IMG/VR virus record: IMGVR_UViG_3300045973_000169
Location: 124,001 to 188,000 of that record
DNA: 64,000 bases
Reading direction: 5' to 3' (one strand)
Within the stretch, counting starts at the first letter, position 1. The number at the start of each line of letters is the position of its first letter. The notes under the pieces are model-generated. The model did not search any database and was not told the DNA's origin. It saw nothing but the letters and a program-made list of their open reading frames with translations. Below are positions 6,191-62,286 of the stretch, one piece after another. The position numbers and the translations under genes are program-made.

Positions 6191-6223
6191 TTAGGAACTC
6201 CATTTATCCTAAGTGTTAATAAC
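6191..6223 (-). promoter_or_regulatory. GTTATTAACA motif plus hairpin around the RBS of the endonuclease gene
   Basis: Minus strand: GTTATTAACA-C-TTAGGA-taaatGGAGt-TCCTAA-at-ATG. Confidence 0.5.
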
Positions 6224-6385
6224 TCAACGTCCTTTGCGTTCTCGTACTGCATTTTTAGAGTTCTTCCTTGTGTTTCTAGACTTGCCTATAGCAGTTACTT
6301 TAGTCCCTGATTGAGTCTTACCTTTCTTTTCTGTATCGCCTTTTTTAGCTTTTACATTGCTTGCTTTAACTGGGGCCTTAGCCAT
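6224..6385 (-). CDS. Unannotated 53-aa basic protein (MAKAPVKASNVKAKKGDTEKKGK...RERKGR)
   Basis: GAGGT RBS; open frame read manually; strongly Lys/Arg-rich; preceded by the GTTAATAACA motif. Confidence 0.7.
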   Translation of the reverse strand: MAKAPVKASNVKAKKGDTEKKGKTQSGTKVTAIGKSRNTRKNSKNAVRERKGR

Positions 6386-6422: not shown

Positions 6423-6432
6423 TGTTATTAAC
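6423..6432 (-). promoter_or_regulatory. Candidate late promoter/operator motif GTTAATAACA
   Basis: The same 10-mer recurs in other intergenic gaps (34408, 62277). Confidence 0.45.
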
Positions 6433-34407: not shown

Positions 34408-34417
34408 TGTTATTAAC
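34408..34417 (-). promoter_or_regulatory. GTTAATAACA motif copy
   Basis: Exact copy in a 15-nt gap, overlapping the RBS spacer. Confidence 0.35.
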
Positions 34418-42920: not shown

Positions 42921-45900
42921 TTAACCTCTGTATTGGTGCATATCTGATTTATAAGGATCAGTCCCATCCGAACGAACAGAGACTGTATTGTTAAGTCGTC
43001 CACCGAAAGCAGCGGAGATAGATGAAATTGAATCATTATGGTTTTCTCGTCTGTCTGTTAATAAACCCATGTGCATATTATTCCCCATAGATGATCCCAT
43101 CTGTCTTGGTGTTCCCATATATCCTCTATGTGAATCTCCAAATGATGGATTAGATACAGAAGGAAGATCATTTATATCTTCTGGAGTCCCATCCCCACCA
43201 AGTACATTTAGTGCAGTCATTGCAACTAAACCTGCTCCAAGAGCAAGTCCAACTTTCCCTGGAGTAATTTTACCCATAAGATTTCTTACTTGCTCTGCTC
43301 CATAAATTTCTCTCTTAGATATCCCTTTTACAATAGATCCATGTAGTTCAGGATTAATAAATGACTCATGACCTAAGTGTCTCTGTAAGTTTGAGTCTCC
43401 AAGAAGACCTTTAAAGAATCCTTCTTCGCTATCTCTATGTTGTCTTATAACTGCATCATAGCTTTCAGAAGCAGAGAAGTGACCTGTCTTCTTTAGGTCT
43501 TCTATAAAGTCGAAATAACTATGAGATGTAGTATATCCCATATTCTTAAAAGCTTCGGTTTCATTTGTGAATGTCATTCCTTTTGTCTTCTCTACATAAG
43601 CAGCAGCTCTAGTCTTAGCTAGTTCTGGAGTAAACCCTGGAAGTAACTTTAATGCATTCTCTACCTCAGTTGCTCCTTCACGCTTAAACATTGTATGTAT
43701 ATTAGTTAATGTTTCGAATTCTTTCTTAACGTTATTCTTTGACCCTTCACGTAAGAAAGCAGGAACTTCACCATTCCTATTCTGTACTGCATTTAATGTA
43801 TTGTATAGATGTAATGCACCAACTTCACCTTGTAACTCTGCAAACCCAGTTAGAGCTTTCTCTTTAGTTAGCTCTCCCATGTTGGCAACCATGTGATCTA
43901 TTTTGTTGGTTACACCAAGCATCTTCTCTACGTGCTTTGAAGATATAGACCCCTGGACAATTTCTTTAGCAGGGATATCTATTGCATGAATCATTGCATT
44001 CATCTGTTGTTCTTCAGATAGAGATGAATTTCCAATAATCTTGCTCATCATTGCATTAGTCATCTCTTTGGTTCTTACATGCGCTGAACCAGTAGTTCGT
44101 TTAGTTAACCAAGCTGCAGTAACAGATTCTTTTTCAGAATATGCCATAGCCTTAGTCAAATCATCTAATCTGTCTGCATGTGGGAGGAAGTAATTCTTAG
44201 ATTCATTATTGAAAATAGCCTGTAATGAATTCTTCTTATTTTCTTTTATCGCATTGATAACATCATGTGACATGCTTTGTTCTTTTAAGATTCTATCATA
44301 TACATTAGATCTGTTTTGAGTATGGAATAAGAATTTAGCAAATGCAATATCACCGTCATTATCAGCATTCATTAATGTTCTTAGGCGATGTCCGAATGCT
44401 ATAAACTTACCACCTTCGACATATCCTTTATCTGTAGCAAATGTGAAAGATAAAGCTTTAGAAGAAGAATAGATATTAGGGAAACGGTCTACAAATGTAG
44501 ACTGTCCCGCTCTCTCTATTAATGAAGCTGCTTTATCATGTTGTCCACTTTGGACTAACGAATGTAATAAGTCATAATCTTTAACAGATTGTTGAGCTAT
44601 ACTATGACCTACTTGTTTAAATTTATCTCCTGAAGCTATATCAGCATAATGCTTTTCGAATATATTCCCTTTACCAAATCTATCTTCTAAGAAAGAACTA
44701 ATTGTTTTATTATTATCCTTAGCTGTTATATATGATTTCTGTAATTCATCAGCGATAGAAGATGCATATGTTTCTTTGTCAATTACAGTAGTGTTACCAA
44801 ATAGATGGTCTAGCTTAGATCCTTCTTCAATACTGCCAATTAATTCTTTATTATTAATAAGATGAGTATCGGCAAATACTTTATCTAGTGAAGCTCCCTC
44901 AACTTGGAAAGCGCCTCTTCTTAAGTATCCTTCTTTAGATGCCATATTACCAGTCGCTCTAATATCAATTAGCTTCTGATAGTTACTACTGCTAATCACT
45001 CCACCATTATTCTTTGCATCAACTAATATCTGTGTTTCTAATCTAACATCTCTAGAAACAGCTAACCTTTCTTCGTCATCTAAGTATTGTGACTTCTGAT
45101 AAAAATCTCCAGATCCGAAATAAGCTAATCTCCCATCTTCAGTTGCAACACCAAATCCTTTGGCATTAACATCTGGGTTAAGAAATGATTTAGTCATTAA
45201 ATAAGGATCATCTATATTGCCGCCTTTGATTATCTTACCATCGGCAAGCATCTCTTCAAGCCCTTCTTTATTCAGGACTTTAACTCCAGTCTTCTCCATC
45301 TGTCCAGCTAACTTAGGATCTTTCATGAAGTTCATATACATCTGACCTTCAGATAGAATCTTCCTTGAATCAGTTAAACTACTTCCTGCAAGCTCTTCCA
45401 TTACTTTACTTGGAAGCAGATATGGCATATCATTGACACCCATTCTATAAACATTATGTCCTATCCCTTGAGTATATAAACTCTCTTGAGGAAATATAGT
45501 TGACATGATATGGAACTGATTTATATTCTTAGTTTTATCACCAAGGCTCTGTAAATGATCTGTCATTAAATCAGCAGCATCATTATAAGAGATATCTTGT
45601 GAGCCGCCTCTCATATGTCCTAGTAATCTAGTCATTAAGTTTATCTGTTCTTTCATCGGGCCAGCCCCTTGGTCGAACTGTAATCTCCCTTGTCGTGCTA
45701 GCTGAGTAAGATTCCCAGTAAATCCTCCTACATATTTAGATAAACTTTTTGTAAGGTTCTCATTTAATACAACATCTTTTTCTGCAGCATAAGCGTGTCC
45801 AGCTACCATTGACTGTAATGTAGTTAACATACTCCCTGCGCCTTTACCTGCAATTATACCATCAATCCCATCTTTACCTATAGATGAAGGAAATACTTTC

Positions 45901-47900
45901 TTGAAGAAATCGAGAGACATATCGAAACTAACATTCTTGCCATACAGAGCAGCTGTTTCTTGTGGCATTAATTGAGCAGCACTTCTTAGATCATGATAAG
46001 TTCCTACTTTAGTAAGGGCCTCAACACTTTGACCATAGAATGTTTTCTCAATTGTTCCTTCTCCGAATCCTCTTAATGTTCTTGCAATATCTTCTTTAGT
46101 CTGGATAACCTTAGTATTTGTTGTAACTAAACCATTAGAATGAGACATAGCTCTATCATATGAAGCAGCAGTATCTATCTGATTATTGGCAGTACCTAAC
46201 CCAACTACAGTCCCAGGTCTTAGTTCGATCCTTTCAACTTGGCTTAATGTTTTTGTATCATTATATAGGTCAAATAGAGTCTTATCACTGTGTGATTCTC
46301 CACCGATTATATATGTAGGATTCATTAATTTAGTCATAGCCTGTTTTTCACTTGGTAATCCACCCCAAGTATATCCAGTCTTTGCTTTCATCTCTATGGC
46401 TCTAGAAACCCTCATATTATCTTTTAAACCAGGGGCGAATTGGATAACCTCTTCTGTATGTGGATTTATTACCCCTAGCATTGTTGCATGCCCTTGGTCA
46501 TAAACCTGTCCATAAGCTAAAGGATTAGTCCCTTGAGCTAAATGACTCCAAACTAAAGGTAGGTTCTTATCAATATTTTCACCAAAACGTCCATGGAATT
46601 TAAAGTCTTTCATAGATTTGAGTGAGTCGATACCATTCCCTTTAGTCATGGTTGGGAAGAATGTAGATGTCCACATAGCCCCTTGACTCTGAGAAACATT
46701 ATATCCAATGAATTCATTTATCTGTTGTTGTATTGGAGAATGGATACCTCTAAATTTATTATTAGCATTACCTCTTGCTACTTCATTCATTCCAGCTACT
46801 GCATTAATGGCTTCTGGTTCTATTGAGTGTAGACTATTTAATGAAACATTAGACTCCATCGCTCCCCTAAGTCCAGCATTTTCCATTTCATGTAAACCAT
46901 AGATATCATTCTTTACTGTACGCCCTAACCTTTGGATCTTCGCCGGTGAGTTCCCTTCTGCCCACAATAGATGACTGCTAAGGTTTTTAAATAGTTGTTT
47001 GATGCCATGCATCTCATGGAAATCTTTAACTATTCTTTCAGCATTAGTCTTGCTCTCAATCATCTTTACATGAGCAGCAGCATCTTTCCCTTTAGTCCCT
47101 TTTCTTATAATATCATCATAATGGAGAACATCTCTTACATCTCTGGCATTCCCAGAGTTAGCTGTAATTAATGCTTTCTGATTATTAGAAATCATATCTA
47201 AGACATATTCATTATAAGACATGAATTCAGATCCAACTACATTCTTACCTTCAAGTGTTGGTCTCCTAAAGTAAGGAGCCACATAATGTGCTCCTTCTTT
47301 ATTTCTTACAATCCAAGCTCCAGTCTCTTCGTCGAATTTTGCTAAAGGAACTTCTACGCTATGATTACCTATCTTTACACTTAAAGATGTACTAGCTCCA
47401 ACAGCATCTTCTCTCGTAGCTGTAATCCCTAGTTTCTTTAAGTTTTCTAATACCTTAGACTGGACATCTACATTATCAATAGAATAGACACCTTTGTTTA
47501 GGTTAACTCCATGGACAGTAGATCCATTAGAGAATCTTGCTATTTCTTCAGCGGTTATATCAATTCCAGTCTCTTTGAGTCCAACACTGTTTATGCTATT
47601 AATCTTCTCAATCATAGAAGTGTCTCTATGAGCATAAGTAGCTTTCTTCATCTCCATCCCACGCTTTAAGCCTGTGTCTATAGAGTCTGCTATATTAGAT
47701 ATACGTCTCTGTAATGGGGTTTGACTTGGGTTAGTTAATGGCATAACCTTATCTAATATATTAGTTAGTTGCCCACCTAACCAACCTTCTGGCTCTCTAT
47801 TAACTTTATATAAAGTATATGCTGAAGCACCTAGTATCCCAGTCATCCCTATCTTCGGGACGATTGAATCATTGTATTGTTCATAAGGTCTATTAGACAT
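42921..47900 (-). CDS. Putative single-chain two-barrel (beta/beta'-like) virion RNA polymerase
   Basis: NADNDGD (aa 1178-1184) preceded by DRFP (R1139) and KEGYLR (K989); Q-x6-H (Q1316); upstream beta-like KDNMRVS and K-x4-H-x2-R (K631). Confidence 0.72.
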   Translation of the reverse strand: MSNRPYEQYNDSIVPKIGMTGILGASAYTLYKVNREPEGWLGGQLTNILDKVMPLTNPSQTPLQRRISNIADSIDTGLKRGMEMKKATYAHRDTSMIEKINSINSVGLKETGIDITAEEIARFSNGSTVHGVNLNKGVYSIDNVDVQSKVLENLKKLGITATREDAVGASTSLSVKIGNHSVEVPLAKFDEETGAWIVRNKEGAHYVAPYFRRPTLEGKNVVGSEFMSYNEYVLDMISNNQKALITANSGNARDVRDVLHYDDIIRKGTKGKDAAAHVKMIESKTNAERIVKDFHEMHGIKQLFKNLSSHLLWAEGNSPAKIQRLGRTVKNDIYGLHEMENAGLRGAMESNVSLNSLHSIEPEAINAVAGMNEVARGNANNKFRGIHSPIQQQINEFIGYNVSQSQGAMWTSTFFPTMTKGNGIDSLKSMKDFKFHGRFGENIDKNLPLVWSHLAQGTNPLAYGQVYDQGHATMLGVINPHTEEVIQFAPGLKDNMRVSRAIEMKAKTGYTWGGLPSEKQAMTKLMNPTYIIGGESHSDKTLFDLYNDTKTLSQVERIELRPGTVVGLGTANNQIDTAASYDRAMSHSNGLVTTNTKVIQTKEDIARTLRGFGEGTIEKTFYGQSVEALTKVGTYHDLRSAAQLMPQETAALYGKNVSFDMSLDFFKKVFPSSIGKDGIDGIIAGKGAGSMLTTLQSMVAGHAYAAEKDVVLNENLTKSLSKYVGGFTGNLTQLARQGRLQFDQGAGPMKEQINLMTRLLGHMRGGSQDISYNDAADLMTDHLQSLGDKTKNINQFHIMSTIFPQESLYTQGIGHNVYRMGVNDMPYLLPSKVMEELAGSSLTDSRKILSEGQMYMNFMKDPKLAGQMEKTGVKVLNKEGLEEMLADGKIIKGGNIDDPYLMTKSFLNPDVNAKGFGVATEDGRLAYFGSGDFYQKSQYLDDEERLAVSRDVRLETQILVDAKNNGGVISSSNYQKLIDIRATGNMASKEGYLRRGAFQVEGASLDKVFADTHLINNKELIGSIEEGSKLDHLFGNTTVIDKETYASSIADELQKSYITAKDNNKTISSFLEDRFGKGNIFEKHYADIASGDKFKQVGHSIAQQSVKDYDLLHSLVQSGQHDKAASLIERAGQSTFVDRFPNIYSSSKALSFTFATDKGYVEGGKFIAFGHRLRTLMNADNDGDIAFAKFLFHTQNRSNVYDRILKEQSMSHDVINAIKENKKNSLQAIFNNESKNYFLPHADRLDDLTKAMAYSEKESVTAAWLTKRTTGSAHVRTKEMTNAMMSKIIGNSSLSEEQQMNAMIHAIDIPAKEIVQGSISSKHVEKMLGVTNKIDHMVANMGELTKEKALTGFAELQGEVGALHLYNTLNAVQNRNGEVPAFLREGSKNNVKKEFETLTNIHTMFKREGATEVENALKLLPGFTPELAKTRAAAYVEKTKGMTFTNETEAFKNMGYTTSHSYFDFIEDLKKTGHFSASESYDAVIRQHRDSEEGFFKGLLGDSNLQRHLGHESFINPELHGSIVKGISKREIYGAEQVRNLMGKITPGKVGLALGAGLVAMTALNVLGGDGTPEDINDLPSVSNPSFGDSHRGYMGTPRQMGSSMGNNMHMGLLTDRRENHNDSISSISAAFGGRLNNTVSVRSDGTDPYKSDMHQYRG

Positions 47901-47902
47901 TG

Positions 47903-50900
47903 TTAATACCCATAACTAAACTGTGAGTGGATTAGATCACCATATTGAGACTGTGATCTTTGTAAGTAATCTGCATGTCCATTTGTTTCGATATCTATAC
48001 TTGTCATAGTATTCGGTGACATGGTTGGGAACATCTGTATATTTGAAGCTCTATCATCTTGTATTATATATGAAACTATTCTGTTAATAGTTGAATTTGT
48101 TGTTGATCCTGCTGACTTTAATTGGTGTGATGCTAAATTAGCACCATGATCAAATACTGCTTCTCTCAATTTATTATCAAAGAAACCATAATCTTGTATA
48201 TTCTCTCCACCTTCTTTAAGTGCTAATAACTCTACATTTTCAATATTAACATCAGGGGAATAGCCTATCCAATCTTCTTTAGGCATATCATGAGACTTCA
48301 TATATTCTCTTACATACCTAGCTCTTATCCAATCAGCTTTATTAGCATTTCCTCCAGTTTCATTCATATACATCTTACTCTCTTGACCTGACATTCCCCA
48401 ACCTTCGGTTTCCTGTAGGTTCATATAAGCTTGTTGTACATTTATATCATCTGAAGATTCAGCTAACTTCTTGCTCCATATTGCATTGTATAATCTTCTA
48501 GCACCTCTAGGGATATACTTCATGATCTTCCCGCGTTTCTTTGGGTCAGGCTCATTAGCAAATCTAGAGTAATAAGCTCTTTCATTTTCAGGCAAAGCAG
48601 CTAATTCATCTCTTGTATTATCATCAGTTGGGTCAGCCCCTATCATTGTAGAACGCCACATATTATGATAGTAAGTTGCATCTTCTTCATTGCCAGTTTT
48701 AGATGCTTGTACTGCTAACATCTTATATTTGACATATTTAAGAATATCCCAATACTCTTGGTTTTGTCTTCTTTCAACAGTGAATCCTGGTAGGTGATCT
48801 ACACCAAACCATTGGTGCATAAAAGAAGATATAGCAGGAGCCAATAGATGTTGGATAGGGTGTGACCATAACTTAACTTCACGGTTAAATACTTGGTTAG
48901 TTAAGTAATTATCTAAATAGTCTTTTTTAGGGATTAACTTATTAGCCCAGAAGGTCTGGTCATTAGAAATAGTCCCCCAGTATTTAGCCATTGCTCTCCC
49001 AGCATATCCAACTTCATCCTGTTGCATATTGAATTCTGAAAGATTTCCAGTATTAGTTCTTGCTGCTCCTGCTTCTATTAGATCTGAACTAAGATCTCCT
49101 ATTAATGCTTCAGTCCCAGATTCAGAATTATTCATCTGATCTGCAGATGGAGCTTGAAAAGAAATACTCTGACCAATGCCAATACGTGATGCTATAATTT
49201 GTGATGTCCTTGCTCTTGCCTCTTCTGCTGCTCTTGCTAATTCTGATGTTGAACTAAACTTTTCTTTTAATAGTAAATTAGCTCTTATATCCGCTTCTGA
49301 GGTTGAAACACCAGCGATCCTATAGCGAGTATCATCACCTTCAAGAGTAAAGCTTCCTGACTCATCTACGGAGCTTACAGTGCCATTAACTGTATCAGTA
49401 TTTAGTCTATAGTCGTACTCTGATTTAGATGTATAAAGTTTATCTTTGAGTTGTCTTACTTGGTCTAATGTTTCATAGAATCTTTGCTCATCGCCTAAAG
49501 ATAATTGGTCTTGTAATGTTTGATGCATTACTTTATGAGATTGATTTCTAAACTCTTGTGTAAATGGAGCTATGGACTGTAATATCTCTAGCTTTTCAGG
49601 ATCAGGATATTGTTCTAGTTCTTTCCCTTTTAATTCTGGGTAAAGATTCTCCCAACCTTTTCTTGTAGAATATAACCATCCTAAAGGAGTATTATCAAAT
49701 GTAGTCCCATGAGTTACATCATTAGTATATCTTTTAAATGCATCTTTCTTAGTGCTTTCTTGAGGGATCCAAGATACACCATTAAGTTCATTTGGTAAGT
49801 CATTGATTTTCCAATCCTTCATAGGATATGGGAATATACGTCTTAAGAATTCTCCACCTACTCCAGAAATATCTCCTAGCTTCCATCCCCACATCTGTTG
49901 AGCTGGGTTATAGAACTCTCCTGCATTTTCTTTATAAGGAACAAACTGATCTGTAGATTCACCAGTTATATATTGTTTCGCAGTCTCATATGCGAATCCA
50001 GTGAAACCAATTAAGTCATGGTATTGTCTAGACCATCTATCCATAAGATCTTTATTAGATCCTTCTGACTGCATCCCAATAGCTCTAGCTAATTCCATAT
50101 TAGATGCACCAGCGCCCCTCATCCCAATTGTAGTAGGAGTATAAGGTTGAGGTTGTGTCCCTTGACTAGTTAGTTCATGATATACTCTAGTTGGTTTAAT
50201 TAAACGTCCTATTGTTGCTGCTATAGGTTGACCAATTAAAGGGATGTTTGCCCCAAGTGGAGCTGACTCATATACTGGCTGATCTAACTTATGATAATTC
50301 TCTAAGATGTATGGTTTATATAATCCAAATGTTGCATTATGTAAAGCTCTCTCCCAATAGTTAGGATATACAACTCCTCTATTCTCATAGTCAGATTCAA
50401 TTACACTAAACATATGCTTTCTAAATTGGATAGGAGTTCCACCCTCATAAGGAGAAGAAGACAATAACCAACCTCTATACTTACGAACTGCTACTTCCTT
50501 ATCACCAGCATACTCAGCTTTTCTTTCTTGATATGTTTTATTAGAACCTAAAACCCCAGGGAGAAATGGTAACATTGGTACCATCATAGCTGCGAAAATA
50601 GCCTTCTTAGGATTTCTTAGTGCCCAACCTGCATATCTTTCAAAGTGAGTTTTAGTTAAAGCACCAGCATAAGCTTCTGTTCTTAGAGCATTTTTTATGA
50701 AACTATTCTTACCGAACCTAGTCCCAACATTTCTTAGATATTGCTTTATACCAACTGGGCCTTTATTGTAAAGGTATTCTCCAATTTTAAAGAATGAAGT
50801 TGCTGTTAGTGCAGGAGCTAATATGCCTAACCTAGTAGATCCTGGAGCCACTTTTTCTTGCTTCTTTGTCAGTCTTGTGAATCCAGTTATATCTGATATC

Positions 50901-53749
50901 TTACTATAAAGTAATGTAGCTCCTTCGAAAGCTTTGATAGGCCCCATAGTTAAAGGTCCACGACCAGTAGGACTCATTGTTATTGCACCTAGTAAATGGT
51001 CAGTAAGTCTGAAAGCTTCCCATGCAGCCATTACAGGCAGTGCACGTTTAAGCCCAAACTTAACTCCATACTCTAAGAAGCCCATATTATGAGTATAAGT
51101 TGCTAATCCTAAATGAGGTCTATTGATAACTCCAAGAGCTTTACCCGCTAATCCTTTGATAAGACTATTTGATGACTTTAATTTAGATGCAACCTTATCA
51201 AGTTTATTGCTATCAATCCCAAAGAATCCAAGTTCAAAAGGAGATTCCATAAACCTATTCCATCTATCAAGCATGAACGTTCTAGTAGGAACACCTATCT
51301 CTCTATATCTATTTTTTATATTCTGATATGTATGTCCTGGAAGAAGTATCTGATCTACTTGAGCCAAGGTTTTTGTATTAGCTGAACCTTTAGGCATCCA
51401 GTCACTAAATATATTAGCGCTCTCTCCTACACCTTTGGGTCCTAACTCAAGATTAAATTGGGTTTTCTTATACATACTCCAGAGCCATTTCCACTCTGGG
51501 TTATTTTTAATAGATGCAGGTATCTCTTGTTTCTTCATCCATTCAGCACTAGAAGGCCAAACTGCTCTTCCTGATTTAATTTGTTGATGTTGCATTTCCC
51601 AATAAGTAGTTGGATTTGTTATATGATTTTCACCATATCCTTTCCCGAATCTATTTATTGAGTTAACTCCTGACATGTTAGCATGTCTTGTATTCCTTAG
51701 CTTAAATGTAAATGGCAGAGTTAGTTGTTCAGTTTTTTGTAATACTCCACCTTCAAGTGTGTCTTGAGCATAAACAATCATTGCTCCATTATCTGCTGTA
51801 GCAAATCTTATTTCTTTAGAAACAATCTTCTTGGCACTTGAACTTATTTGGTCTTTCGGTGTAAGCCAAGACTCAAGTTTATTATAATCCTGTTCTGGTA
51901 TTAGTCTTTTCGAGTTCTCTAATATATCAGTAAAGTCAACTCCATGGACATAATCTCTTGTCCCATCTATCCCAATAGATTTGCCATCTCTGATTGTTTT
52001 GAAGACCTTATCATATTTTCTAATCTTCCCTTCAATAGCGGCTCCTTTTTTATCACCACGGAACCAATCTATAGTACCACCTACCTGTAAGACTCTAGTG
52101 ATATTATGAGAACCTTCGATTGTCTTAAGTCCTCTAAACATAGTATCAGTGATATTCTTTCTTGAGAAATCAAATGTTGCTTTATTGTTTAAAAGTCTTG
52201 GAGACATGATCTTACTATAAGCTCCAACTCCATATAAAAATGCACCAACCCCAGTTACTCCTTTAGCAATCGTAGCAACCTGAACAAATGAGTTATGTTT
52301 ATCTTCAAAGAATGTACTGTAATTAGGAGCATGTGGGAGCCCAAGATTGTTAATCTTCATCTTATCAGAGAAAGGACTTAATGAATCGTCCCCTCTTAAT
52401 CCATAGGTAGCTAACAGTCCTAGCCCTACTATGGTACCCATTGCACCCCATCTTAACTTATTAGCCCCTTTAAAGGCTTCAGTCATCTGACCTGCCATTT
52501 TAGAACCTTCAAACATAGATGGATATTTTGAGTAAGATTCTAGTATTGGCTTTAATTGGTGAGTTAGATCTTCTATTATTGGGCTAAGTTTATTTTCTGA
52601 TTGTAATAATTTAGATAAGTTGCCATGAACATCGCCTTTAATTATCTGGTCAACAGTTATTCCTGCCTTATTTAACTGGCTAAGAATAGCTTTCTCTATT
52701 TGTTTCTCAGTACTTACATCTAGTCCTGCAGCATGGCCTTGGACTAAATCTTTTCCAAAGTGTTTAGATACAATAGCAGCAGCCTTCTCCGCACTATATC
52801 CACCAGCATACTGGAACTCTTCAAAATTTAAAGGTACACGTCCAGGTCTCCCTGTCGCTGCAGCAGCAACTGGATTATATCCAATCCTAAACATATTACC
52901 AAGCTCAGGATTCTCTTTCCCAAGCTGGTATAAGAATGCTTTGTATGCTCTCTCAACCTCATCTGTTTGGATTATCCCTTGCTGATATGCAGTATAAAGA
53001 GCTTTAGCTTCATCAGCAGCTCCCATCTTAACTAGCTCTGACATATATAAGTTAATATCGAAATAAGGATTCCATGCTCCTAATCTAACTGGAGCTTCCT
53101 TAGTTCCCATCTTAAGCATATTAACTACATTCTTCTTTAAGAATCCTTGGAACTGTTCATATGTAAAGTCACCAGCATACTCGACGCCTTCTTTCTTAAA
53201 GATGCCTTCTAGTGCTCCAGCTTTACTCTTTATTAATTTACCATCTTTCACACTAAAGTCTTTAGATTTTAATCCTAAGTCTAAGTTTCCTTTAGCAATA
53301 AATATATGCCCACCATTCTCAGTAGGGAGTTTAAATAGAGCATCCATTTGAGATACTTGGCTTGGCAGTATTCTCTTCTTATACCAATCTAATTTCCCAC
53401 CCTGTAACTTAGACCAAGATGCACCAAATAAACTTTCTAGATCTCGCTCTGAATGTTTTGGAATTAGATAAGATTCTACCTGTCCGAACCCTTTAAGATG
53501 TCTTACATACTTAGAGTCTGGATTAACAAAGTCTGGGAGTTTATGTCTATTATTAAAATCAATCCCATAATGTTTAATAGTATTAGTCTGACCATCATGA
53601 ATAGCAAACTGAGTTACATCAACGTGACCGAAGTGTAAGAATGCATCAGTAGGATTTAATACAGTTGTACGACCAAGCTTATCATAAGCCTTAGTTAAAC
53701 CAGTATTTAATCCTATTGTTTCAAAGTCTACTATTAATCTTCTAGACAT
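47903..53749 (-). CDS. Tape-measure-like giant protein with N-terminal DEDDh exonuclease domain
   Basis: Directly follows the tail chaperones; Gly/Ala hydrophobic helices; N-terminal VDFET, AWNPYFD and HAAGLD motifs. Confidence 0.7.
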   Translation of the reverse strand: MSRRLIVDFETIGLNTGLTKAYDKLGRTTVLNPTDAFLHFGHVDVTQFAIHDGQTNTIKHYGIDFNNRHKLPDFVNPDSKYVRHLKGFGQVESYLIPKHSERDLESLFGASWSKLQGGKLDWYKKRILPSQVSQMDALFKLPTENGGHIFIAKGNLDLGLKSKDFSVKDGKLIKSKAGALEGIFKKEGVEYAGDFTYEQFQGFLKKNVVNMLKMGTKEAPVRLGAWNPYFDINLYMSELVKMGAADEAKALYTAYQQGIIQTDEVERAYKAFLYQLGKENPELGNMFRIGYNPVAAAATGRPGRVPLNFEEFQYAGGYSAEKAAAIVSKHFGKDLVQGHAAGLDVSTEKQIEKAILSQLNKAGITVDQIIKGDVHGNLSKLLQSENKLSPIIEDLTHQLKPILESYSKYPSMFEGSKMAGQMTEAFKGANKLRWGAMGTIVGLGLLATYGLRGDDSLSPFSDKMKINNLGLPHAPNYSTFFEDKHNSFVQVATIAKGVTGVGAFLYGVGAYSKIMSPRLLNNKATFDFSRKNITDTMFRGLKTIEGSHNITRVLQVGGTIDWFRGDKKGAAIEGKIRKYDKVFKTIRDGKSIGIDGTRDYVHGVDFTDILENSKRLIPEQDYNKLESWLTPKDQISSSAKKIVSKEIRFATADNGAMIVYAQDTLEGGVLQKTEQLTLPFTFKLRNTRHANMSGVNSINRFGKGYGENHITNPTTYWEMQHQQIKSGRAVWPSSAEWMKKQEIPASIKNNPEWKWLWSMYKKTQFNLELGPKGVGESANIFSDWMPKGSANTKTLAQVDQILLPGHTYQNIKNRYREIGVPTRTFMLDRWNRFMESPFELGFFGIDSNKLDKVASKLKSSNSLIKGLAGKALGVINRPHLGLATYTHNMGFLEYGVKFGLKRALPVMAAWEAFRLTDHLLGAITMSPTGRGPLTMGPIKAFEGATLLYSKISDITGFTRLTKKQEKVAPGSTRLGILAPALTATSFFKIGEYLYNKGPVGIKQYLRNVGTRFGKNSFIKNALRTEAYAGALTKTHFERYAGWALRNPKKAIFAAMMVPMLPFLPGVLGSNKTYQERKAEYAGDKEVAVRKYRGWLLSSSPYEGGTPIQFRKHMFSVIESDYENRGVVYPNYWERALHNATFGLYKPYILENYHKLDQPVYESAPLGANIPLIGQPIAATIGRLIKPTRVYHELTSQGTQPQPYTPTTIGMRGAGASNMELARAIGMQSEGSNKDLMDRWSRQYHDLIGFTGFAYETAKQYITGESTDQFVPYKENAGEFYNPAQQMWGWKLGDISGVGGEFLRRIFPYPMKDWKINDLPNELNGVSWIPQESTKKDAFKRYTNDVTHGTTFDNTPLGWLYSTRKGWENLYPELKGKELEQYPDPEKLEILQSIAPFTQEFRNQSHKVMHQTLQDQLSLGDEQRFYETLDQVRQLKDKLYTSKSEYDYRLNTDTVNGTVSSVDESGSFTLEGDDTRYRIAGVSTSEADIRANLLLKEKFSSTSELARAAEEARARTSQIIASRIGIGQSISFQAPSADQMNNSESGTEALIGDLSSDLIEAGAARTNTGNLSEFNMQQDEVGYAGRAMAKYWGTISNDQTFWANKLIPKKDYLDNYLTNQVFNREVKLWSHPIQHLLAPAISSFMHQWFGVDHLPGFTVERRQNQEYWDILKYVKYKMLAVQASKTGNEEDATYYHNMWRSTMIGADPTDDNTRDELAALPENERAYYSRFANEPDPKKRGKIMKYIPRGARRLYNAIWSKKLAESSDDINVQQAYMNLQETEGWGMSGQESKMYMNETGGNANKADWIRARYVREYMKSHDMPKEDWIGYSPDVNIENVELLALKEGGENIQDYGFFDNKLREAVFDHGANLASHQLKSAGSTTNSTINRIVSYIIQDDRASNIQMFPTMSPNTMTSIDIETNGHADYLQRSQSQYGDLIHSQFSYGY

Positions 53750-54321
53750 TATAAGTATCCATTCTCGTCATCACTCTTCTGTAATGCAATTTTAAGAGAC
53801 TCAAGCATTTCTTTAGTAATACCTTTAACCCCAGTTTTAATCTTAGGATTACTTTTTACATTTTCTTGTTTAATATGTTCTCTTAATTTAGTTGTATCTA
53901 TTAGTGGTTGATGGTCTACCATCTCTGCAAATGCTAATAGCTCAAGTAACTCATTAAGAGTCTTAAGCTTTAGTTCATCTAATCTATAATTTGGTTGGGT
54001 AGAAACGATCTTTGCATAAATAGGATAATATGTATTAGATGTTAGAGTCTTACGGATATTATCTATCTCATCAGGAAACTGTTCTTTCTTTAATATTACT
54101 CCGGATAACTTAAATGAAGTATAAACTATTAATGGAATAGTCCCTGCAGAAAGATCTTTATCTGCATATTTATTATCTGTTATTAGATTAAATATATATT
54201 CTTCTAGATAAGGATTACTTTCTTGTTTAAGAGCAAAGTAGAACCTGTCTGCTTCTTCAGCAGATATAGTCCTAAACTCTATATCTAGATTATCTATAGT
54301 AGGAATTTTAAAATATTTCAT
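53749..54321 (-). CDS. Putative tail assembly chaperone (second paralogue)
   Basis: Position before the tape-measure-like gene; FRTIS..E...YI...LSAG...I...S pattern shared with 55103-55507. Confidence 0.55.
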   Translation of the reverse strand: MKYFKIPTIDNLDIEFRTISAEEADRFYFALKQESNPYLEEYIFNLITDNKYADKDLSAGTIPLIVYTSFKLSGVILKKEQFPDEIDNIRKTLTSNTYYPIYAKIVSTQPNYRLDELKLKTLNELLELLAFAEMVDHQPLIDTTKLREHIKQENVKSNPKIKTGVKGITKEMLESLKIALQKSDDENGYL

Positions 54322-54335
54322 GAATGGCTATATCC

Positions 54336-55061
54336 TTATTGAATATCTTTTAGTATTAGTTCTATATTTTTCATTTCCCAATAAGGAATTTCTAATAACT
54401 TAATATTGTTATCTTTACAATACTGCTTTTTAGTACTATCTCTTTGTTGTAAACTTACAAGAGCCTCATTACCTCCCCAGTATTTAACAGACCTATAATG
54501 TTGCATCCCATTAAACTCTATACAAACCTTATGGTTTGGTAGGTAGAAGTCAAATCTCAATGGGAGCCTTTGGTCTTTAAAGAATAAATTATCAAATGTT
54601 TTTTGCTGAATATAATCAATGTAATTATTCTCTAGCCATTTTTTAATTCTTATTTCGCCTTTTGAAATATTACACTTAGGACATCCTTGTCCTTTTAAGT
54701 GATCATTTGGGGTTTGCCAAAAACTCCCATGCTTATGGCATATAATACAAACCTTAATTTTGCTTTGTTTGTATTCAACTAAAGAATAATCAAATTTATT
54801 TTCATGGATAGTTTTTGCTTTTCCTAAGAACTCAGGCTTAGACATTTTTGAACTATTCCCAATTATAGAATAATAACACTTTGGGCAACCATTTCCTTTT
54901 AAATGATTCTCAGGGGCCTGTTCAAATTCTCCATGCAAATTACAAACAATAAGAACTTTTGTTTTATTATTTATATATTCAACCTTAGAGTAGTCATATT
55001 TAAAATTATGGATTTGATTAGCTTTATCAATAAGGTCATTAGCAGTTAATCTTTTAGGCAT
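54336..55061 (-). CDS. Putative homing endonuclease (DUF723-type Zn repeats + Vsr/DUF559-like nuclease)
   Basis: IHNFKYDYSKVEY...C..HG.F.Q.P..HLKG.GCPKC twice, then RFDFYLP...CIEFNGMQH; clear paralogue of 5451-6188. Confidence 0.8.
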   Translation of the reverse strand: MPKRLTANDLIDKANQIHNFKYDYSKVEYINNKTKVLIVCNLHGEFEQAPENHLKGNGCPKCYYSIIGNSSKMSKPEFLGKAKTIHENKFDYSLVEYKQSKIKVCIICHKHGSFWQTPNDHLKGQGCPKCNISKGEIRIKKWLENNYIDYIQQKTFDNLFFKDQRLPLRFDFYLPNHKVCIEFNGMQHYRSVKYWGGNEALVSLQQRDSTKKQYCKDNNIKLLEIPYWEMKNIELILKDIQ

Positions 55062-55094
55062 AGATAGAACCTCCTTGGTCTATCTGTTAATAAC
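55062..55094 (-). promoter_or_regulatory. GTTATTAACA motif plus RBS-sequestering hairpin
   Basis: Minus strand: GTTATTAAC-AGATAGACC-AAGGA-GG-t-TCTATCT-ATG. Confidence 0.55.
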
Positions 55095-55102
55095 CAAAGT
55101 GA

Positions 55103-55507
55103 TTAACCTTTTACCTCAAGAATCAACTCTAATGCTTTTGCAGGATCTTTGAAGAAATTTGACATTACAAGGATTTGATATACTAAAGTAAGCGCAACTC
55201 CAGCCTCTAAAGTATTTAGTGCGATTGGGTCCATCTTAGGCCATACGATACATGTGTTAAGAATATAATCATGGGTCATATCTTTATCTAGTTTCTTTGC
55301 TCTGATATCTCTGAACTCAGCCCAAGAAAGTTTTTTAAACATATAAAAGGAATAATCATCTTCATTACCTAAAAATGTAGCATAAAGCTTTTCATTTCTA
55401 GCTTTAAGTTTTTCGAATGTAGCTCTATCTAATTTGTTATAAGTAACCTTTTCCCAGTTGATATCTCCATAAAAATCATGAGTAGCTACTGCTGGTGTAT
55501 CTTCCAT
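55103..55507 (-). CDS. Putative tail assembly chaperone
   Basis: 134 aa after the tube genes; FKKLSWAEF...ILNTCIVWP...LEAGVALTL...SNF. Confidence 0.6.
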   Translation of the reverse strand: MEDTPAVATHDFYGDINWEKVTYNKLDRATFEKLKARNEKLYATFLGNEDDYSFYMFKKLSWAEFRDIRAKKLDKDMTHDYILNTCIVWPKMDPIALNTLEAGVALTLVYQILVMSNFFKDPAKALELILEVKG

Positions 55508-55544
55508 TATTTACCTCTAAGCTTTTATTTTATTACAATTGTTA

Positions 55545-56939
55545 TTAAACTATCTTTCTTGCAATAAAGTTATACTGTTCTTTGACTGGAACACCAGATA
55601 CTGCTAATGCATGACTATGACCAGTTAACTCACAGCTTTCTAATATCTTATGTGTATTCCCATTATAGTCGAACATAATATTGAATTTACCAAAGTCTTC
55701 AGGTCTCCAATCTCTCTTCGTTAATTCTCCTCTAAGATTATTAGCAGATCCCATAGTGTCTAATTGGGCAGCAAGATCCATTCCTGATTGTTTTTCTTTT
55801 TCTTTCAATGCAGCGATCTCTTTTTTAATTGTCTCTATCGAAGTTTTAGATGTATCAACTTTCTCTTTTTGGGTTTTTATTGCAGCAAGATTCTTTGTCT
55901 TCTCTCCTTGGATATCTAATGTAGGAGTGCTTTCTAAAAACTTAACTTGATCTGTTTGTACTCTAGCAAGAGTGGTATCGAAACTAATAGCCTTTTTAAG
56001 ATTAGAGTCACCATCTAACATTCCTTTTAACTGATTACTATTTTGTGTAATAGCAGAGTTAAACTGTTGTGTAGTTTCATCTCTTAATGTTAATAGATTG
56101 TCAACCACTAGATTATTGTCATCTATTCTTTTCTGTACTTCATTTATACCATTAGTATAGTTAAATCTATTAGCATCAGATAGCACTGGTTCATTTTGTC
56201 CAGGTGATAACAATGACTGTAAGTTAGAAAGGGTTGTTTGTAAATCACTTACTTCTTGGTTTATTCTATTTAGTTCATCATTTATACTCTTTAAATTATC
56301 TTCATGTTGTTTATTTAACTGGACTAACCCTCCACTGGCTTGAGGATCATTGATGCCTTCATTAAATGTTTTAAGTTTCATCCTAAGAGCTTCTTGCTCT
56401 GTGTCTCCAAGCCCGTTTATAAATGAGTCCTTATCTGACTGTATATTATTAATCTTTACTTTAAAGTTATTAGTCTGAGCTAATTTCTCTTGGTCTTGTA
56501 TCACTAGATTTGCATCTATTTCTTTACCATAAGATTGTAATTCAGCAAGCTTTCTCTTATCATCTTGAAGAGTTTGTTGTAATTTCTTATAAGCAATAAG
56601 TTTATTTTTAAAGTTTTGAGCTGCTTTGCTATTTTCTGCCTGCCTATCAATCGACTTTTGTGCTGATTCTCCAGGTTGTAGGTTCTTTAATATAGCCCAT
56701 AGATATTTATCATGCTTATAGTTAATTGTAAAACTGCCATATATAATAACTTGACCTGGGAGGATAGCATCAAAATGCTTAGAGTTATATCCATAGATAG
56801 GCTCTTTTGATTCCTGATATGTATATTGGATATCATAGCATTCATCTAATAAGATCCCTCCTATATAAATCCTACCTTGGGCAGCAGTTACATAGTCTAC
56901 TTTAATCTTCTTATCTGATATAATAGGATACTCTACCAT
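55545..56939 (-). CDS. Tail-tube-like protein with ~300-aa coiled-coil insertion
   Basis: N-terminal IQYTYQESKEPIYGY...G...IYGSF and C-terminal FNI...EQYNFIAR align with the tube protein; Gln/Lys/Leu heptad middle. Confidence 0.7.
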   Translation of the reverse strand: MVEYPIISDKKIKVDYVTAAQGRIYIGGILLDECYDIQYTYQESKEPIYGYNSKHFDAILPGQVIIYGSFTINYKHDKYLWAILKNLQPGESAQKSIDRQAENSKAAQNFKNKLIAYKKLQQTLQDDKRKLAELQSYGKEIDANLVIQDQEKLAQTNNFKVKINNIQSDKDSFINGLGDTEQEALRMKLKTFNEGINDPQASGGLVQLNKQHEDNLKSINDELNRINQEVSDLQTTLSNLQSLLSPGQNEPVLSDANRFNYTNGINEVQKRIDDNNLVVDNLLTLRDETTQQFNSAITQNSNQLKGMLDGDSNLKKAISFDTTLARVQTDQVKFLESTPTLDIQGEKTKNLAAIKTQKEKVDTSKTSIETIKKEIAALKEKEKQSGMDLAAQLDTMGSANNLRGELTKRDWRPEDFGKFNIMFDYNGNTHKILESCELTGHSHALAVSGVPVKEQYNFIARKIV

Positions 56940-58207: not shown

Positions 58208-58228
58208 TGATTGTCACCTATACAAAAC

Positions 58229-58262
58229 TAAAGCCCAAGCCACATAATGGCACTGGGCTTTA
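58229..58262 (-). terminator. Intrinsic terminator after the major tail tube gene
   Basis: Minus strand TAAAGCCCA-gt-GCCA-ttatg-TGGC-t-TGGGCTTTA followed by GTTTTGT. Confidence 0.7.
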
Positions 58263-58296
58263 TTTGTTAAAGTTGAATTTTTAAATTGAAAGAGAA

Positions 58297-62276: not shown

Positions 62277-62286
62277 TGTTATTAAC
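62277..62286 (-). promoter_or_regulatory. GTTAATAACA motif copy
   Basis: GTTAATAACAATAAA, identical over 15 nt to the copy near 6423. Confidence 0.45.

What the first reader, a model, noticed from the sequence alone, without database searches (positions are those of the whole stretch)
55059..55094. Homing endonuclease RBS locked in a hairpin directly downstream of a candidate late promoter
Seen: GTTATTAAC-AGATAGACC-AAGGA-GG-t-TCTATCT-ATG, a 9-bp stem covering half of the AAGGAGG RBS and the whole spacer. Knowledge: T4-like phage homing endonucleases such as I-TevI are silenced on long transcripts by RBS hairpins and translated from late transcripts starting inside the hairpin. Inference: the same logic here with a different promoter motif.
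Basis: partly seen in the sequence, partly recalled or inferred. Interest (0 to 1): 0.6.

Follow-up and report, generated by a model that had tools for sequence, protein, structure and literature searches.

The report
Promoter-plus-hairpin switch on phage homing endonucleases
An uncultivated 207-kb pond phage puts the same short promoter-like motif, followed at once by a hairpin over the ribosome binding site, in front of nearly all its selfish nuclease genes, which probably means they are translated only from their own short transcripts, as for I-TevI in phage T4.

Summary
On the minus strand, GTTATTAACA (55094-55085) is followed at once by a 9-bp, one-bulge hairpin (55085-55062). The hairpin pairs the last two G of AAGGAGG and the whole spacer and ends at the ATG (55061) of a 241-aa Vsr-like homing endonuclease.

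Alone the hairpin is only modestly above chance (12-14 of 200 shuffles fold as well). It is one of a class:
- All 15 nuclease genes behind the motif in this genome are HNH, GIY-YIG or Vsr-like.
- 14 of the 15 carry a hairpin that starts within 5 nt of the motif's AAC. None of 8 non-nuclease genes with the motif does.
- Two related phages show the same design on a DUF723/Vsr-like and a LAGLIDADG gene.
- The 9-mer TTAWTAACA is strand-specific, mostly intergenic, and conserved upstream of orthologous virion genes in distant relatives.
- Five syntenic relatives lack this endonuclease, so motif, hairpin and gene arrived as one cassette.

I infer a transcript start 4 nt after the motif, inside the 5' arm, from genes with the ATG exactly there and no Shine-Dalgarno. 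This would cut the hairpin from -9.2 to -3.0 kcal/mol.

The I-TevI logic is supported by comparison only. No RNA data exist, and the start, the timing and the polymerase are unproven.

The parts
55085..55094 (-). Promoter-like motif GTTATTAACA (G1 = 55094, A10 = 55085). It is one copy of the clade-wide motif (G)TTAWTAACA-N-N-Y-R.
   Evidence: 7 exact copies in the window, all minus strand, 0.8 expected; 43 copies of the 9-mer in the genome, 40 co-oriented with genes, 27 intergenic; same strand bias in four distant relatives.
55081..55081 (-). Inferred transcript start (motif position 14, an A preceded by T), inside the 5' arm. Inferred, not measured.
   Evidence: five genes have the ATG exactly 3 nt after the 10-mer and no Shine-Dalgarno, while their orthologues have 20-23 nt plus a Shine-Dalgarno. 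T at position 13 in 14 of 15 endonuclease sites; purine at position 14 in 25 of 28 intergenic sites (p = 0.004).
55077..55085 (-). 5' arm of the hairpin, AGATAGACC. It starts with the last base of the motif.
55070..55076 (-). Shine-Dalgarno AAGGAGG. AAGGA forms the 5-nt loop (55076-55072); the last two G are paired.
55062..55071 (-). 3' arm GGTTCTATCT (one bulged T). It covers the end of the Shine-Dalgarno and the whole spacer and ends one base before the ATG.
   Evidence: cognate arm pairing -10.8 kcal/mol, rank 1 of 15 against the arms of the other endonuclease leaders.
54336..55061 (-). Free-standing homing endonuclease gene, 241 aa: two DUF4379/DUF723 zinc-finger repeats plus a C-terminal Vsr-like (I-Bth0305I-type) nuclease domain. 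The conserved D171, E182, H188 and K211 are present.
54322..55100 (-). Approximate extent of the inserted cassette (motif + hairpin + ORF + a new ribosome binding site for the next gene), judged against the empty sites of relatives.
   Evidence: in L009, L048, L049, L050 and L011 the 133-136-aa gene and the 185-210-aa gene are 1-16 nt apart.
55103..55507 (-). Upstream gene (134 aa, no family match), co-oriented. No terminator-like site was found between it and the endonuclease, so read-through RNA should carry the full hairpin.
55540..55549 (-). Copy of the motif (TTTAATAACA) upstream of the 134-aa gene, conserved at the same place in L009, L048 and L050. It is the likely source of read-through RNA.
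53749..54321 (-). Downstream gene (190 aa), first gene after the cassette. It has to be transcribed through the endonuclease gene.
6214..6223 (-). Second copy of the same design in the window: GTTATTAACA, then a hairpin, then a paralogous Vsr-like endonuclease (5451-6188) with an HNH gene overlapping its stop (5053-5454).
34408..34417 (-). Motif copy GTTAATAACA with the ATG of a 132-aa virion-block gene exactly 3 nt after it, no Shine-Dalgarno and no hairpin (leaderless-type arrangement).
   Evidence: the G001 orthologue has 21 nt plus a Shine-Dalgarno.
62277..62286 (-). Motif copy GTTAATAACA upstream of the 243-aa gene, without a hairpin. The motif is conserved upstream of this gene's orthologue in every relative examined.

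Best explanation
The 36 bases are the control region of a mobile cassette made of a promoter, a hairpin over the ribosome binding site, and a homing endonuclease gene.

Proposed mechanism:
- GTTATTAACA-NN-T-A is a copy of this phage clade's own promoter element, the one that also precedes virion genes.
- Transcription from it most likely starts about 4 nt after the 10-mer, at window 55081, inside the 5' arm.
- RNA that reads through from upstream carries both arms. It folds the end of the Shine-Dalgarno, the spacer and the base before the AUG into a 9-bp hairpin (or an alternative pairing with upstream sequence). The endonuclease is then poorly translated from it.
- RNA started at the cassette's own promoter lacks the first four pairs, so the hairpin falls from about -9 to about -3 kcal/mol and the ribosome binding site is open.

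Consequences:
- The nuclease is made only from its own, presumably weak or late, transcripts. The gene can sit inside essential operons without being co-expressed with them.
- For the 12 copies embedded in the replication-gene block this gives delayed expression, as for I-TevI.
- For this copy in the virion-gene block it mainly uncouples the nuclease from abundant operon RNA.

Shown by analysis: the sequence, the predicted fold, the genome-wide recurrence, the restriction to endonuclease genes, the conservation of the motif, and the insertion polymorphism.

Inferred: that the motif is a promoter, where the transcript starts, the timing, and the effect on translation.
For: 1. Recurrence across nuclease families.
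- All 15 genes directly behind GTTAWTAACA that encode nucleases belong to HNH (several PHROGs), GIY-YIG or Vsr-like families.
- 14 of the 15 have a hairpin whose 5' arm begins 0-5 nt from AAC. In 11 the 3' arm lies in the spacer or over the AUG, with the Shine-Dalgarno in the loop or the 3' arm.

2. Specificity to endonuclease genes.
- 0 of 8 non-nuclease genes with the motif have such a hairpin (Fisher p = 2e-5).
- Mean folding energy over -32..+9 is -7.35 against -3.25 kcal/mol for 238 other genes (p = 3.5e-6).
- With relatives included, a clamp helix of 7 bp or more occurs at 13 of 17 endonuclease sites against 5 of 28 others (p = 1.5e-4).

3. The arms differ in sequence but pair with their own partner.
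- Cognate pairing averages -7.4 against -4.0 kcal/mol for non-cognate arms. None of 20000 permutations reaches the cognate mean.
- The paralogue at G000 92094 keeps the helix through a C-G to G-C exchange.

4. The same design in relatives.
- L011 has a DUF723/Vsr-like gene at a different site, with an 8-bp hairpin that includes the AUG: -7.6, falling to 0.0 kcal/mol if the RNA starts at position 14.
- L069 has a LAGLIDADG gene between the two DnaE halves (-9.0 kcal/mol).

5. Promoter-like behaviour of the motif.
- 40 of 43 copies are co-oriented with genes and 27 are intergenic.
- Strand bias in four relatives whose capsid-like protein is 42-46% identical: 13:1, 12:0, 5:0 and 17:1.
- It is conserved upstream of the orthologous 243-aa, 134-aa and 132-aa genes.
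- It follows intrinsic terminators at G000 200745 and 193251.
- It is nearly absent from the replication blocks of relatives that lack endonuclease genes.

6. Position of the start.
- Distances from motif to ATG are bimodal: exactly 3 nt without a Shine-Dalgarno (five cases), or 12 nt or more.
- Purine at position 14.

7. Effect of truncation.
- Mean hairpin energy falls from -9.8 to -2.9 kcal/mol when the RNA starts at position 14. For the target it falls from -9.2 to -3.0.
- Predicted unpaired fraction of the ribosome binding site rises from 0.35 to 0.56 (p = 0.0012).

8. Cassette insertion.
- Empty sites in L009, L048, L049, L050 and L011.

9. Precedent.
- I-TevI, I-TevII, I-TevIII, segB and mobE work this way (PMC2988022).
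Against: - No transcript start or expression data exist. Only the source DNA run holds the sequence.
- The target hairpin alone is weakly significant.
- In a 114-nt context the best fold is a different pairing of the Shine-Dalgarno with upstream sequence.
- With long flanks, predicted accessibility does not separate endonuclease from non-endonuclease sites significantly (p = 0.13).
- The leaderless argument rests on about three independent cases. Those start codons could instead be reached by re-initiation after the upstream stop.
- Purine at position 14 is not enriched in relatives above the coding background (0.71 against 0.70).
- No RNA polymerase or sigma factor was found that could read the motif.
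- The motif core is a palindrome, which is more typical of a dimeric DNA-binding protein than of a -10 element.
- For the target, the upstream promoter is of the same class, so there is no obvious temporal switch.
- Three or four endonuclease genes do not follow the rule.
Confidence: 0.6

Rival explanations
1. The hairpin is a constitutive 5'-terminal structure. Transcription starts at or before the last bases of the motif, so every endonuclease mRNA begins with the stem-loop. The stem-loop would then protect the short transcript from 5'-end-dependent decay, or throttle translation at all times, rather than tell long RNA from short RNA.
For: - The 5' arm always starts within 0-5 nt of AAC, and in 7 of 15 sites the helix includes bases of the motif itself. 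That is also what a 5'-terminal hairpin would need.
- The transcript start is not measured.
- 5'-terminal stem-loops are known mRNA stabilisers (general knowledge).
- At site 33920 the hairpin lies upstream of the Shine-Dalgarno rather than over it.
Against: - Loops vary from 5 to about 18 nt, so that the 3' arm nearly always lands in the spacer or on the AUG. A stabiliser does not need that.
- The hairpin is absent from the non-endonuclease genes that use the same motif.
- Genes with the ATG 3 nt after the 10-mer imply a start at about position 14, inside the arm.
Confidence: 0.2
2. The motif is not a promoter. It would be an RNA-processing site or the binding site of a dimeric protein. Cleavage of read-through RNA a few nt after the motif would remove the 5' arm and activate translation (activation by processing), or a bound protein would regulate the nuclease and virion genes.
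For: - GTTAWTAAC is a palindrome around its centre.
- No phage RNA polymerase or sigma factor was detected.
- There is no -35-like partner, and sigma-70-type scans are at chance level.
- A cleavage site would also explain genes whose AUG sits 3 nt after the motif.
Against: - Copies of the motif follow strong intrinsic terminators, where a new start is needed.
- The motif is directional: A10 and the T-purine step at positions 13-14 are conserved on one side only.
- It arrives with the endonuclease cassettes inside operons, and it is missing from the same operons in relatives. That fits an imported promoter.
Confidence: 0.12
3. The target hairpin is a chance inverted repeat in AT-rich sequence and has no function.
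For: 12-14 of 200 dinucleotide shuffles of the target leader fold as well.
Against: - Recurrence at 14 of 15 endonuclease leaders with unrelated arm sequences.
- Absence at control sites.
- Presence in two related phages.
Confidence: 0.03

Closest known systems
[quoted passage not shown]
   Same: - A homing endonuclease gene is embedded co-directionally in host-phage operons.
- A consensus Shine-Dalgarno and start are folded into a hairpin.
- A phage-specific promoter is placed so that its own transcripts should lack the 5' arm.
- Read-through RNA is therefore silent.
   Different: - The promoter motif is unrelated: (G)TTAWTAACA-NN-Y-R against T4 TATAAATA. The polymerase or factor that reads it is unknown.
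- All copies here are free-standing; Rfam finds no group I intron in 144 kb.
- The rule covers 14 of about 18 nuclease genes of three families here, and a fourth family in a relative. In T4 it covers 5 of 15, and seven are promoter-less.
- The Shine-Dalgarno mostly sits in the loop, with the spacer and AUG paired.
- The target copy lies in a late-type operon.
- Nothing here has been measured.
T4 late genes e, soc, 49, 25 and 26, whose early read-through transcripts are translationally silent because of hairpins over the ribosome binding site (cited in PMC2988022)
   Same: A promoter inside or next to a hairpin over the ribosome binding site makes translation depend on where the RNA starts.
   Different: In this phage the ordinary virion genes that carry the motif have no such hairpin (0 of 8). 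The device is reserved for endonuclease genes.
I-Bth0305I (EDxHD / Vsr-like homing endonuclease of Bacillus phage 0305phi8-36; PDB 3r3p)
   Same: - The C-terminal domain of the target model superposes on it: TM 0.74 by target, rmsd 3.0 over 109 columns, 23% identity.
- It is a phage-borne homing nuclease.
   Different: - The target is free-standing, whereas I-Bth0305I is intron-encoded (my knowledge).
- The target has tandem DUF4379/DUF723 zinc-finger repeats at its N-terminus.
- Sequence searches of the PDB find nothing.
5'-terminal stem-loop mRNA stabilisers (for example the ompA leader and Bacillus 5' stabilisers; my knowledge)
   Same: A hairpin at or next to the transcript start.
   Different: Stabilisers lie upstream of a free ribosome binding site. 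Here the 3' arm is placed on the spacer or the AUG.

Membership tests
I-TevI-type promoter/hairpin translational control of homing endonucleases | The regulated gene is a homing endonuclease embedded co-directionally among phage genes | tested here: met
   Pfam, PHROG and fold matches; empty sites in five syntenic relatives; same strand as its neighbours.
I-TevI-type promoter/hairpin translational control of homing endonucleases | A stable RNA hairpin sequesters the Shine-Dalgarno and/or the start codon | tested here: met
   Prediction only. A 9-bp hairpin of -9.2 kcal/mol pairs two bases of the Shine-Dalgarno and the whole spacer. It is among the best 1.7% of gene starts. The class recurs at 14 of 15 sites.
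I-TevI-type promoter/hairpin translational control of homing endonucleases | A promoter is placed so that its transcripts start inside the hairpin and cannot form it | tested here: inconclusive
   The motif abuts the 5' arm. A start at position 14 is inferred from leaderless-type genes and from purine at position 14. No mapped 5' ends exist.
I-TevI-type promoter/hairpin translational control of homing endonucleases | Read-through transcripts from upstream promoters cover the gene | tested here: inconclusive
   The upstream gene is co-oriented, the gap is 41 nt, and no terminator-like site lies between them. An upstream motif copy sits at 55540-55549. Transcription itself was not observed.
I-TevI-type promoter/hairpin translational control of homing endonucleases | The promoter is a T4-type late promoter (TATAAATA, read with gp55) | tested here: not met
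   The motif is GTTAWTAACA. No sigma-like protein was found by Pfam region 2 or region 4 models. A gp55-specific model was not searched.
I-TevI-type promoter/hairpin translational control of homing endonucleases | Translation is repressed on long RNA and allowed on short RNA | not testable with these tools
   Only folding models are available: -9.2 against -3.0 kcal/mol, and unpaired fraction 0.28 against 0.46 for the target.
Vsr-like / EDxHD homing endonucleases (I-Bth0305I) | Vsr-like nuclease fold in the catalytic domain | tested here: met
   AlphaFold model with pLDDT 92. Foldseek gives 3r3p with TM 0.74 by target, and Vsr 1cw0/1vsr with TM 0.52-0.53, at weak E-values of 0.01-0.03.
Vsr-like / EDxHD homing endonucleases (I-Bth0305I) | Conserved acidic and histidine catalytic residues | tested here: inconclusive
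   D171, E182, H188 and K211 are nearly invariant among 25 homologues and are present in the target. Position 184 is N where most homologues have D, but that column varies (D 15, Q 5, N 3). The residues were not mapped one by one onto I-Bth0305I.
Vsr-like / EDxHD homing endonucleases (I-Bth0305I) | Site-specific cleavage and homing | not testable with these tools
   Only the presence/absence polymorphism among relatives speaks for mobility. The source metagenome shows no variant without the gene.
Sigma-70-type promoter | -35 and -10 hexamers 16-18 nt apart | tested here: not met
   The consensus scan is at or below chance in both regions tested, and no hit lies at the motif. No bases are conserved upstream of G1.

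The most novel reading that the evidence does not exclude
A whole clade of uncultivated large phages uses a so-far undescribed promoter, (G)TTAWTAACA-NN-Y-R. It would be read by an unknown polymerase or factor and would start RNA 4 nt downstream, giving leaderless mRNAs for some virion genes. In these phages, invading homing endonucleases of at least four unrelated nuclease families persist only as cassettes that pair this promoter with a hairpin over the ribosome binding site. That would be a convergent, near-obligatory 'licence' for selfish nucleases, possibly a portable regulatory module that moves between endonuclease genes.
Probability: 0.3. Interest if true: 0.7.

Novelty: new variant of a known kind. 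Interest (0 to 1): 0.55.

Why it matters
The I-TevI arrangement has been seen as a peculiarity of T4-like phages and has been documented for a handful of genes. Here the same logic appears in an unrelated, uncultivated phage lineage with a different promoter. It appears on almost every endonuclease gene, whatever the nuclease family, and not on ordinary genes that use the same promoter.

If confirmed, three things would follow:
- Restricting translation to self-initiated transcripts would be a general condition for selfish nucleases to live inside essential phage operons.
- The pattern would be a sequence signature for finding promoters and transcript starts in phages that cannot be grown.
- It would define a new promoter class whose polymerase or specificity factor is still to be found.

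The data set is also a natural experiment with built-in controls: 17 independent stems, and empty sites in relatives.

Tried and rejected
**Searches for relatives**
- Megablast and tblastn of the region and of the 836-aa neighbour against deposited phage genomes found nothing.
- The search for related loci with the 134-aa neighbour alone found no relative.
Handles do not reach Logan contigs, so only 10 kb either side of the relatives L009, L011, L048-L050 and L068-L070 could be read.
- One region request was over the size limit and was corrected.

**Polymerase or sigma factor**
- Pfam models for multisubunit RNA polymerase (PF04997, PF00562), single-subunit RNA polymerase (PF00940) and sigma-70 regions 2 and 4 gave nothing above cut-off in the genome.
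- The PF00940 control rang nowhere, so that blank says nothing.

**Promoter and RNA scans**
- Sigma-70-type and terminator scans were at or near chance.
- Rfam found only tRNAs and no group I intron.

**Expression and population data**
- The only sequencing run that holds the sequence is the source pond DNA run; there is no RNA.
- Laying that run on 5 kb showed one contig and no variant lacking the endonuclease gene.

**Homologues and known structures**
- Homologues of the endonuclease number over 7,700, but none is above about 54% identical. Orthologous leaders were therefore not available for a covariation alignment.
- A sequence search of the PDB and NCBIfam gave nothing useful.

**Literature**
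- Searches for the motif string returned only unrelated papers.

**Ideas considered and dropped**
- An N4-type DNA-hairpin promoter: the loops here are long, variable and hold the Shine-Dalgarno.
- An intrinsic terminator: there is no T-run, and the ATG follows directly.
- A shared endonuclease target site: the arms differ between copies.
- The AR9 'AACA-N6-TW' and phiKZ 'TATG' late promoter consensus sequences, recalled from memory: the spacing does not fit, and no such polymerase was found.

No other genetic code was used.
Full report
**1. What is there**

The window is bases 124001-188000 of a 206,638-bp virus record with 33.8% G+C. It comes from a pond metagenome and is rated complete by CheckV.

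All large genes in this part of the window lie on the minus strand. Read on that strand, 55094-55059 is:
- GTTATTAAC, then
- AGATAGACC, then
- AAGGA, then
- GG-t-TCTATCT, then
- ATG.

The ATG opens a 241-aa ORF (54336-55061).

RNAfold gives the 9-bp, one-bulge hairpin at -9.1 to -9.2 kcal/mol. AAGGA forms the loop; the last two G of the Shine-Dalgarno and the whole spacer are paired.

Taken alone the hairpin is not striking: 12-14 of 200 dinucleotide shuffles fold as well. A 71-nt context reaches -18 kcal/mol with z = -2.65. Measured against the genome it is unusual: only 4 of 238 other gene starts fold as well over -32..+9.

**2. The gene**

The protein has these features:
- Two DUF4379/DUF723 zinc-finger repeats.
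- Strong matches to PHROG 559 and 9084, annotated as HNH endonuclease and homing endonuclease.
- In an AlphaFold model (pLDDT 92), a C-terminal domain that superposes on the catalytic domain of the homing endonuclease I-Bth0305I and on Vsr.
- The residues that are nearly invariant in 25 homologues, D171, E182, H188 and K211, are all present.

Five syntenic relatives have the flanking 133-136-aa gene and 185-210-aa gene only 1-16 nt apart, with nothing between them. These are L009, L048, L049, L050 and L011, whose capsid-like protein is about 40-58% identical. About 780 bp were therefore inserted here, roughly 54322-55100. The insert holds the motif, the hairpin, the ORF and a new ribosome binding site for the next gene.

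**3. The motif is a clade-wide, promoter-like element**

Within this genome:
- The exact 10-mer GTTAWTAACA occurs 7 times in the window, all on the gene strand, against 0.8 expected.
- The 9-mer TTAWTAACA occurs 43 times in the genome. 40 copies are co-oriented with the local genes, and 27 lie in the roughly 9% of the genome that is intergenic.
- It is the only non-Shine-Dalgarno word enriched upstream of genes.
- It follows strong intrinsic terminators at G000 200745 and 193251.

In relatives:
- Four IMG/VR relatives, whose capsid-like protein is only 42-46% identical, show the same strand bias. The counts are 13:1, 12:0, 5:0 and 17:1, with controls of 4 or fewer.
- The motif sits upstream of the orthologous 243-aa gene in every relative examined. 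It also sits upstream of the 134-aa and 132-aa genes in several.

The surrounding genes are virion genes: capsid-like proteins, a tail-fibre-like protein of 2170 aa, and a 2533-aa protein with a transglycosylase end. Calling the motif a 'late' promoter is therefore reasonable, but it rests on association only.

No RNA polymerase or sigma factor was found by Pfam models, and sigma-70-type scans are at chance. What reads the motif is unknown.

**4. The hairpin is one of a class reserved for endonuclease genes**

Fifteen genes directly behind the motif encode nucleases:
- four Vsr-like paralogues,
- two GIY-YIG,
- nine HNH of several PHROG families.

Twelve of them sit inside the plus-strand block that encodes DNA polymerase III alpha, a RecA-like protein, primase-helicase, ligases and 17 of the 19 tRNAs. 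In that block, 12 of 13 nuclease genes have the motif against 3 of about 165 other genes.

Fourteen of the 15 have a hairpin whose 5' arm begins 0-5 nt from the AAC of the motif. In 11 the 3' arm lies in the spacer or over the AUG. In three the 3' arm overlaps or abuts the 5' part of the Shine-Dalgarno. One (G000 31278) has none.

None of the 8 non-nuclease genes with the motif has such a hairpin (Fisher p = 2e-5).

Supporting numbers:
- Folding energy over -32..+9 averages -7.35 kcal/mol for the nuclease genes against -3.25 for 238 other genes (p = 3.5e-6).
- The arms have different sequences, but each pairs best with its own partner. None of 20000 permutations reaches the cognate mean.
- The paralogue at G000 92094 keeps the helix through a C-G to G-C exchange.

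Two relatives repeat the design:
- L011 has a DUF723/Vsr-like gene at a different site, with an 8-bp helix that includes the AUG.
- L069 has a LAGLIDADG gene between the two halves of DnaE, behind two tandem motif copies, with an 8-bp helix from just after the first copy to the AUG.

Over all genomes, a clamp helix of 7 bp or more occurs at 13 of 17 endonuclease sites and 5 of 28 other motif sites (p = 1.5e-4).

The replication blocks of relatives without endonuclease genes (L068, L070) have one and no sense copies of the motif in 21 kb. This agrees with the motif arriving together with the cassettes.

Three further HNH genes lack the motif. One overlaps the stop of an upstream endonuclease gene and would share its leader.

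**5. Where the RNA probably starts**

There are no RNA data, so this is inference.

- The endonuclease sites conserve T at position 13 (14 of 15) and a purine at position 14 (15 of 15), counting the G of the motif as 1.
- Over all intergenic copies in this genome, position 14 is a purine in 25 of 28 (p = 0.004 against a background of 0.65). In relatives this is no higher than in coding copies.
- The distances from motif to ATG are bimodal. Five genes have the ATG exactly 3 nt after the 10-mer, in the form N-N-C-ATG with no Shine-Dalgarno. These are the 132-aa gene here, a 96-aa gene in G004, and the 243-aa orthologues in L009, L049 and L050.
- The orthologues of those same genes elsewhere have 20-23 nt and a Shine-Dalgarno.

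The simplest reading is a start at position 14, giving leaderless mRNAs in the short class. This amounts to about three independent cases, and re-initiation after the adjacent upstream stop codon is an alternative.

A start at position 14 is window 55081, the fifth base of the 5' arm. The model energy then drops from -9.2 to -3.0 kcal/mol for the target. The mean over the 15 sites drops from -9.8 to -2.9. The predicted unpaired fraction of the ribosome binding site rises from 0.35 to 0.56 (p = 0.0012).

**6. Mechanism and its limits**

The best-supported reading is the I-TevI logic. RNA that reads through from upstream folds the ribosome binding site away. RNA started at the cassette's own promoter cannot.

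The review PMC2988022 documents this arrangement for I-TevI, I-TevII, I-TevIII, segB and Aeh1 mobE, and for T4 genes e, soc and others.

Differences here:
- The promoter motif is unrelated to the T4 late promoter.
- All copies are free-standing, and no intron was found.
- The device covers nearly all endonuclease genes of several families.
- It is absent from ordinary genes that use the same motif.

For the target itself, the nearest upstream promoter-like site (55540-55549) is of the same class, and no terminator-like site was found in between. Here the hairpin would uncouple the nuclease from operon RNA rather than delay it.

Points against, or weak points:
- The target hairpin is of modest stability.
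- In a 114-nt context the best fold pairs CCAAGG of the Shine-Dalgarno with an upstream CACUUUGG instead. That pairing also needs sequence 5' of the inferred start.
- With long flanks, predicted accessibility does not separate endonuclease from other motif sites (p = 0.13).
- The motif core is a palindrome, which suggests a dimeric binding protein.

**7. Rivals**

- A constitutive 5'-terminal hairpin (start at or before A10) would explain the fixed position of the 5' arm. It does not explain the placing of the 3' arm on the spacer or AUG, or the absence from other genes.
- An RNA-processing or protein-binding site instead of a promoter cannot be excluded without the chemistry of the 5' ends. 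Under processing, the same activation by loss of the 5' arm would hold.
- Chance is excluded by the recurrence.

**8. Verdict**

It extends from one gene to a rule for a phage clade.
- The transcript start, the timing and the effect on translation remain to be measured.
- The logic is known from T4. New here are the motif, the scale, the independence from nuclease family and the restriction to endonuclease genes.

Noticed in passing
G000 104718-105890 and 107539-109893 (L006:4718-5890 and L006:7539-9893); relatives L068, L069, L070: DNA polymerase III alpha is encoded in two separate genes. One holds the PHP domain plus the first 100 positions of the catalytic domain (390 aa); the other holds the rest (784 aa). 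Five small ORFs lie between them. The split is conserved in three relatives, one of which has a LAGLIDADG endonuclease gene in the gap. No intein-like ends were seen by eye.
   Followed up: partly
window 34408-34417 with ATG at 34404; L009:5918-5933; L049:5965-5980; L050:5969-5984; G004:63153: Genes whose ATG lies exactly 3 nt after the 10-mer motif, with no Shine-Dalgarno, while orthologues elsewhere have 20-23 nt and a Shine-Dalgarno. This suggests leaderless mRNAs in a phage that otherwise uses strong Shine-Dalgarno sites.
   Followed up: partly
all motif copies in G000: GTTAWTAAC is a palindrome around its centre. The sense-strand centre is T at 14 of 15 endonuclease sites but A at 7 of 9 other sites (p = 7e-4). 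In relatives T also precedes virion genes. The meaning is unknown.
   Followed up: partly
window 5053-5454 and 5451-6188 (minus strand): An HNH gene overlaps by 4 nt the stop of a Vsr-like endonuclease gene, so two nucleases sit in tandem behind one motif plus hairpin. Just upstream, a 53-aa lysine-rich ORF (6224-6385) has its own motif copy (6423-6432).
   Followed up: no
window 6441-12953, 35316-42917, 42921-47900, 47903-53749 (minus strand): Four giant virion-block genes of 2170, 2533, 1659 and 1948 aa. The first is tail-fibre-like and the second ends in a lytic transglycosylase domain. The last two match no family. By eye only, the 1948-aa protein begins with a DFET stretch like the first motif of DEDD exonucleases.
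   Followed up: partly
L005:6236-11311 (G000 86236-91311): A cluster of 17 tRNA genes (19 in the genome) is interspersed with four HNH genes. Three of these carry the motif plus hairpin.
   Followed up: partly
L011:9934, L014:9438, L050:9921; window 58208-58296: In three relatives a motif copy is followed at once by a GC-rich, terminator-like hairpin just upstream of the capsid-like gene. The window has the hairpin but only a degenerate motif. This could be a 5' stabiliser or an attenuator.
   Followed up: no
L005:2978-4168; L004:7014-9756: A PARP catalytic domain with a WGR domain (396 aa), and a JAB-like plus ThiF-like gene pair that flanks one of the endonuclease cassettes. These are unusual auxiliary genes for a phage.
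   Followed up: no
window 55047-55160 (minus strand): In longer contexts the Shine-Dalgarno (CCAAGG) pairs with CACUUUGG just upstream of the motif. An outer helix also forms between GGUUAAUC, which spans the stop of the 134-aa gene, and GAUUAACU in codons 4-6 of the endonuclease gene. These are extra ways to close the site on read-through RNA; their significance is weak.
   Followed up: partly
G004:C1 about 14380-15051: A Vsr-like endonuclease gene in a relative looks frameshifted near its start, at a run of A. It is preceded only by a one-mismatch version of the motif. It may be a decaying copy.
   Followed up: partly
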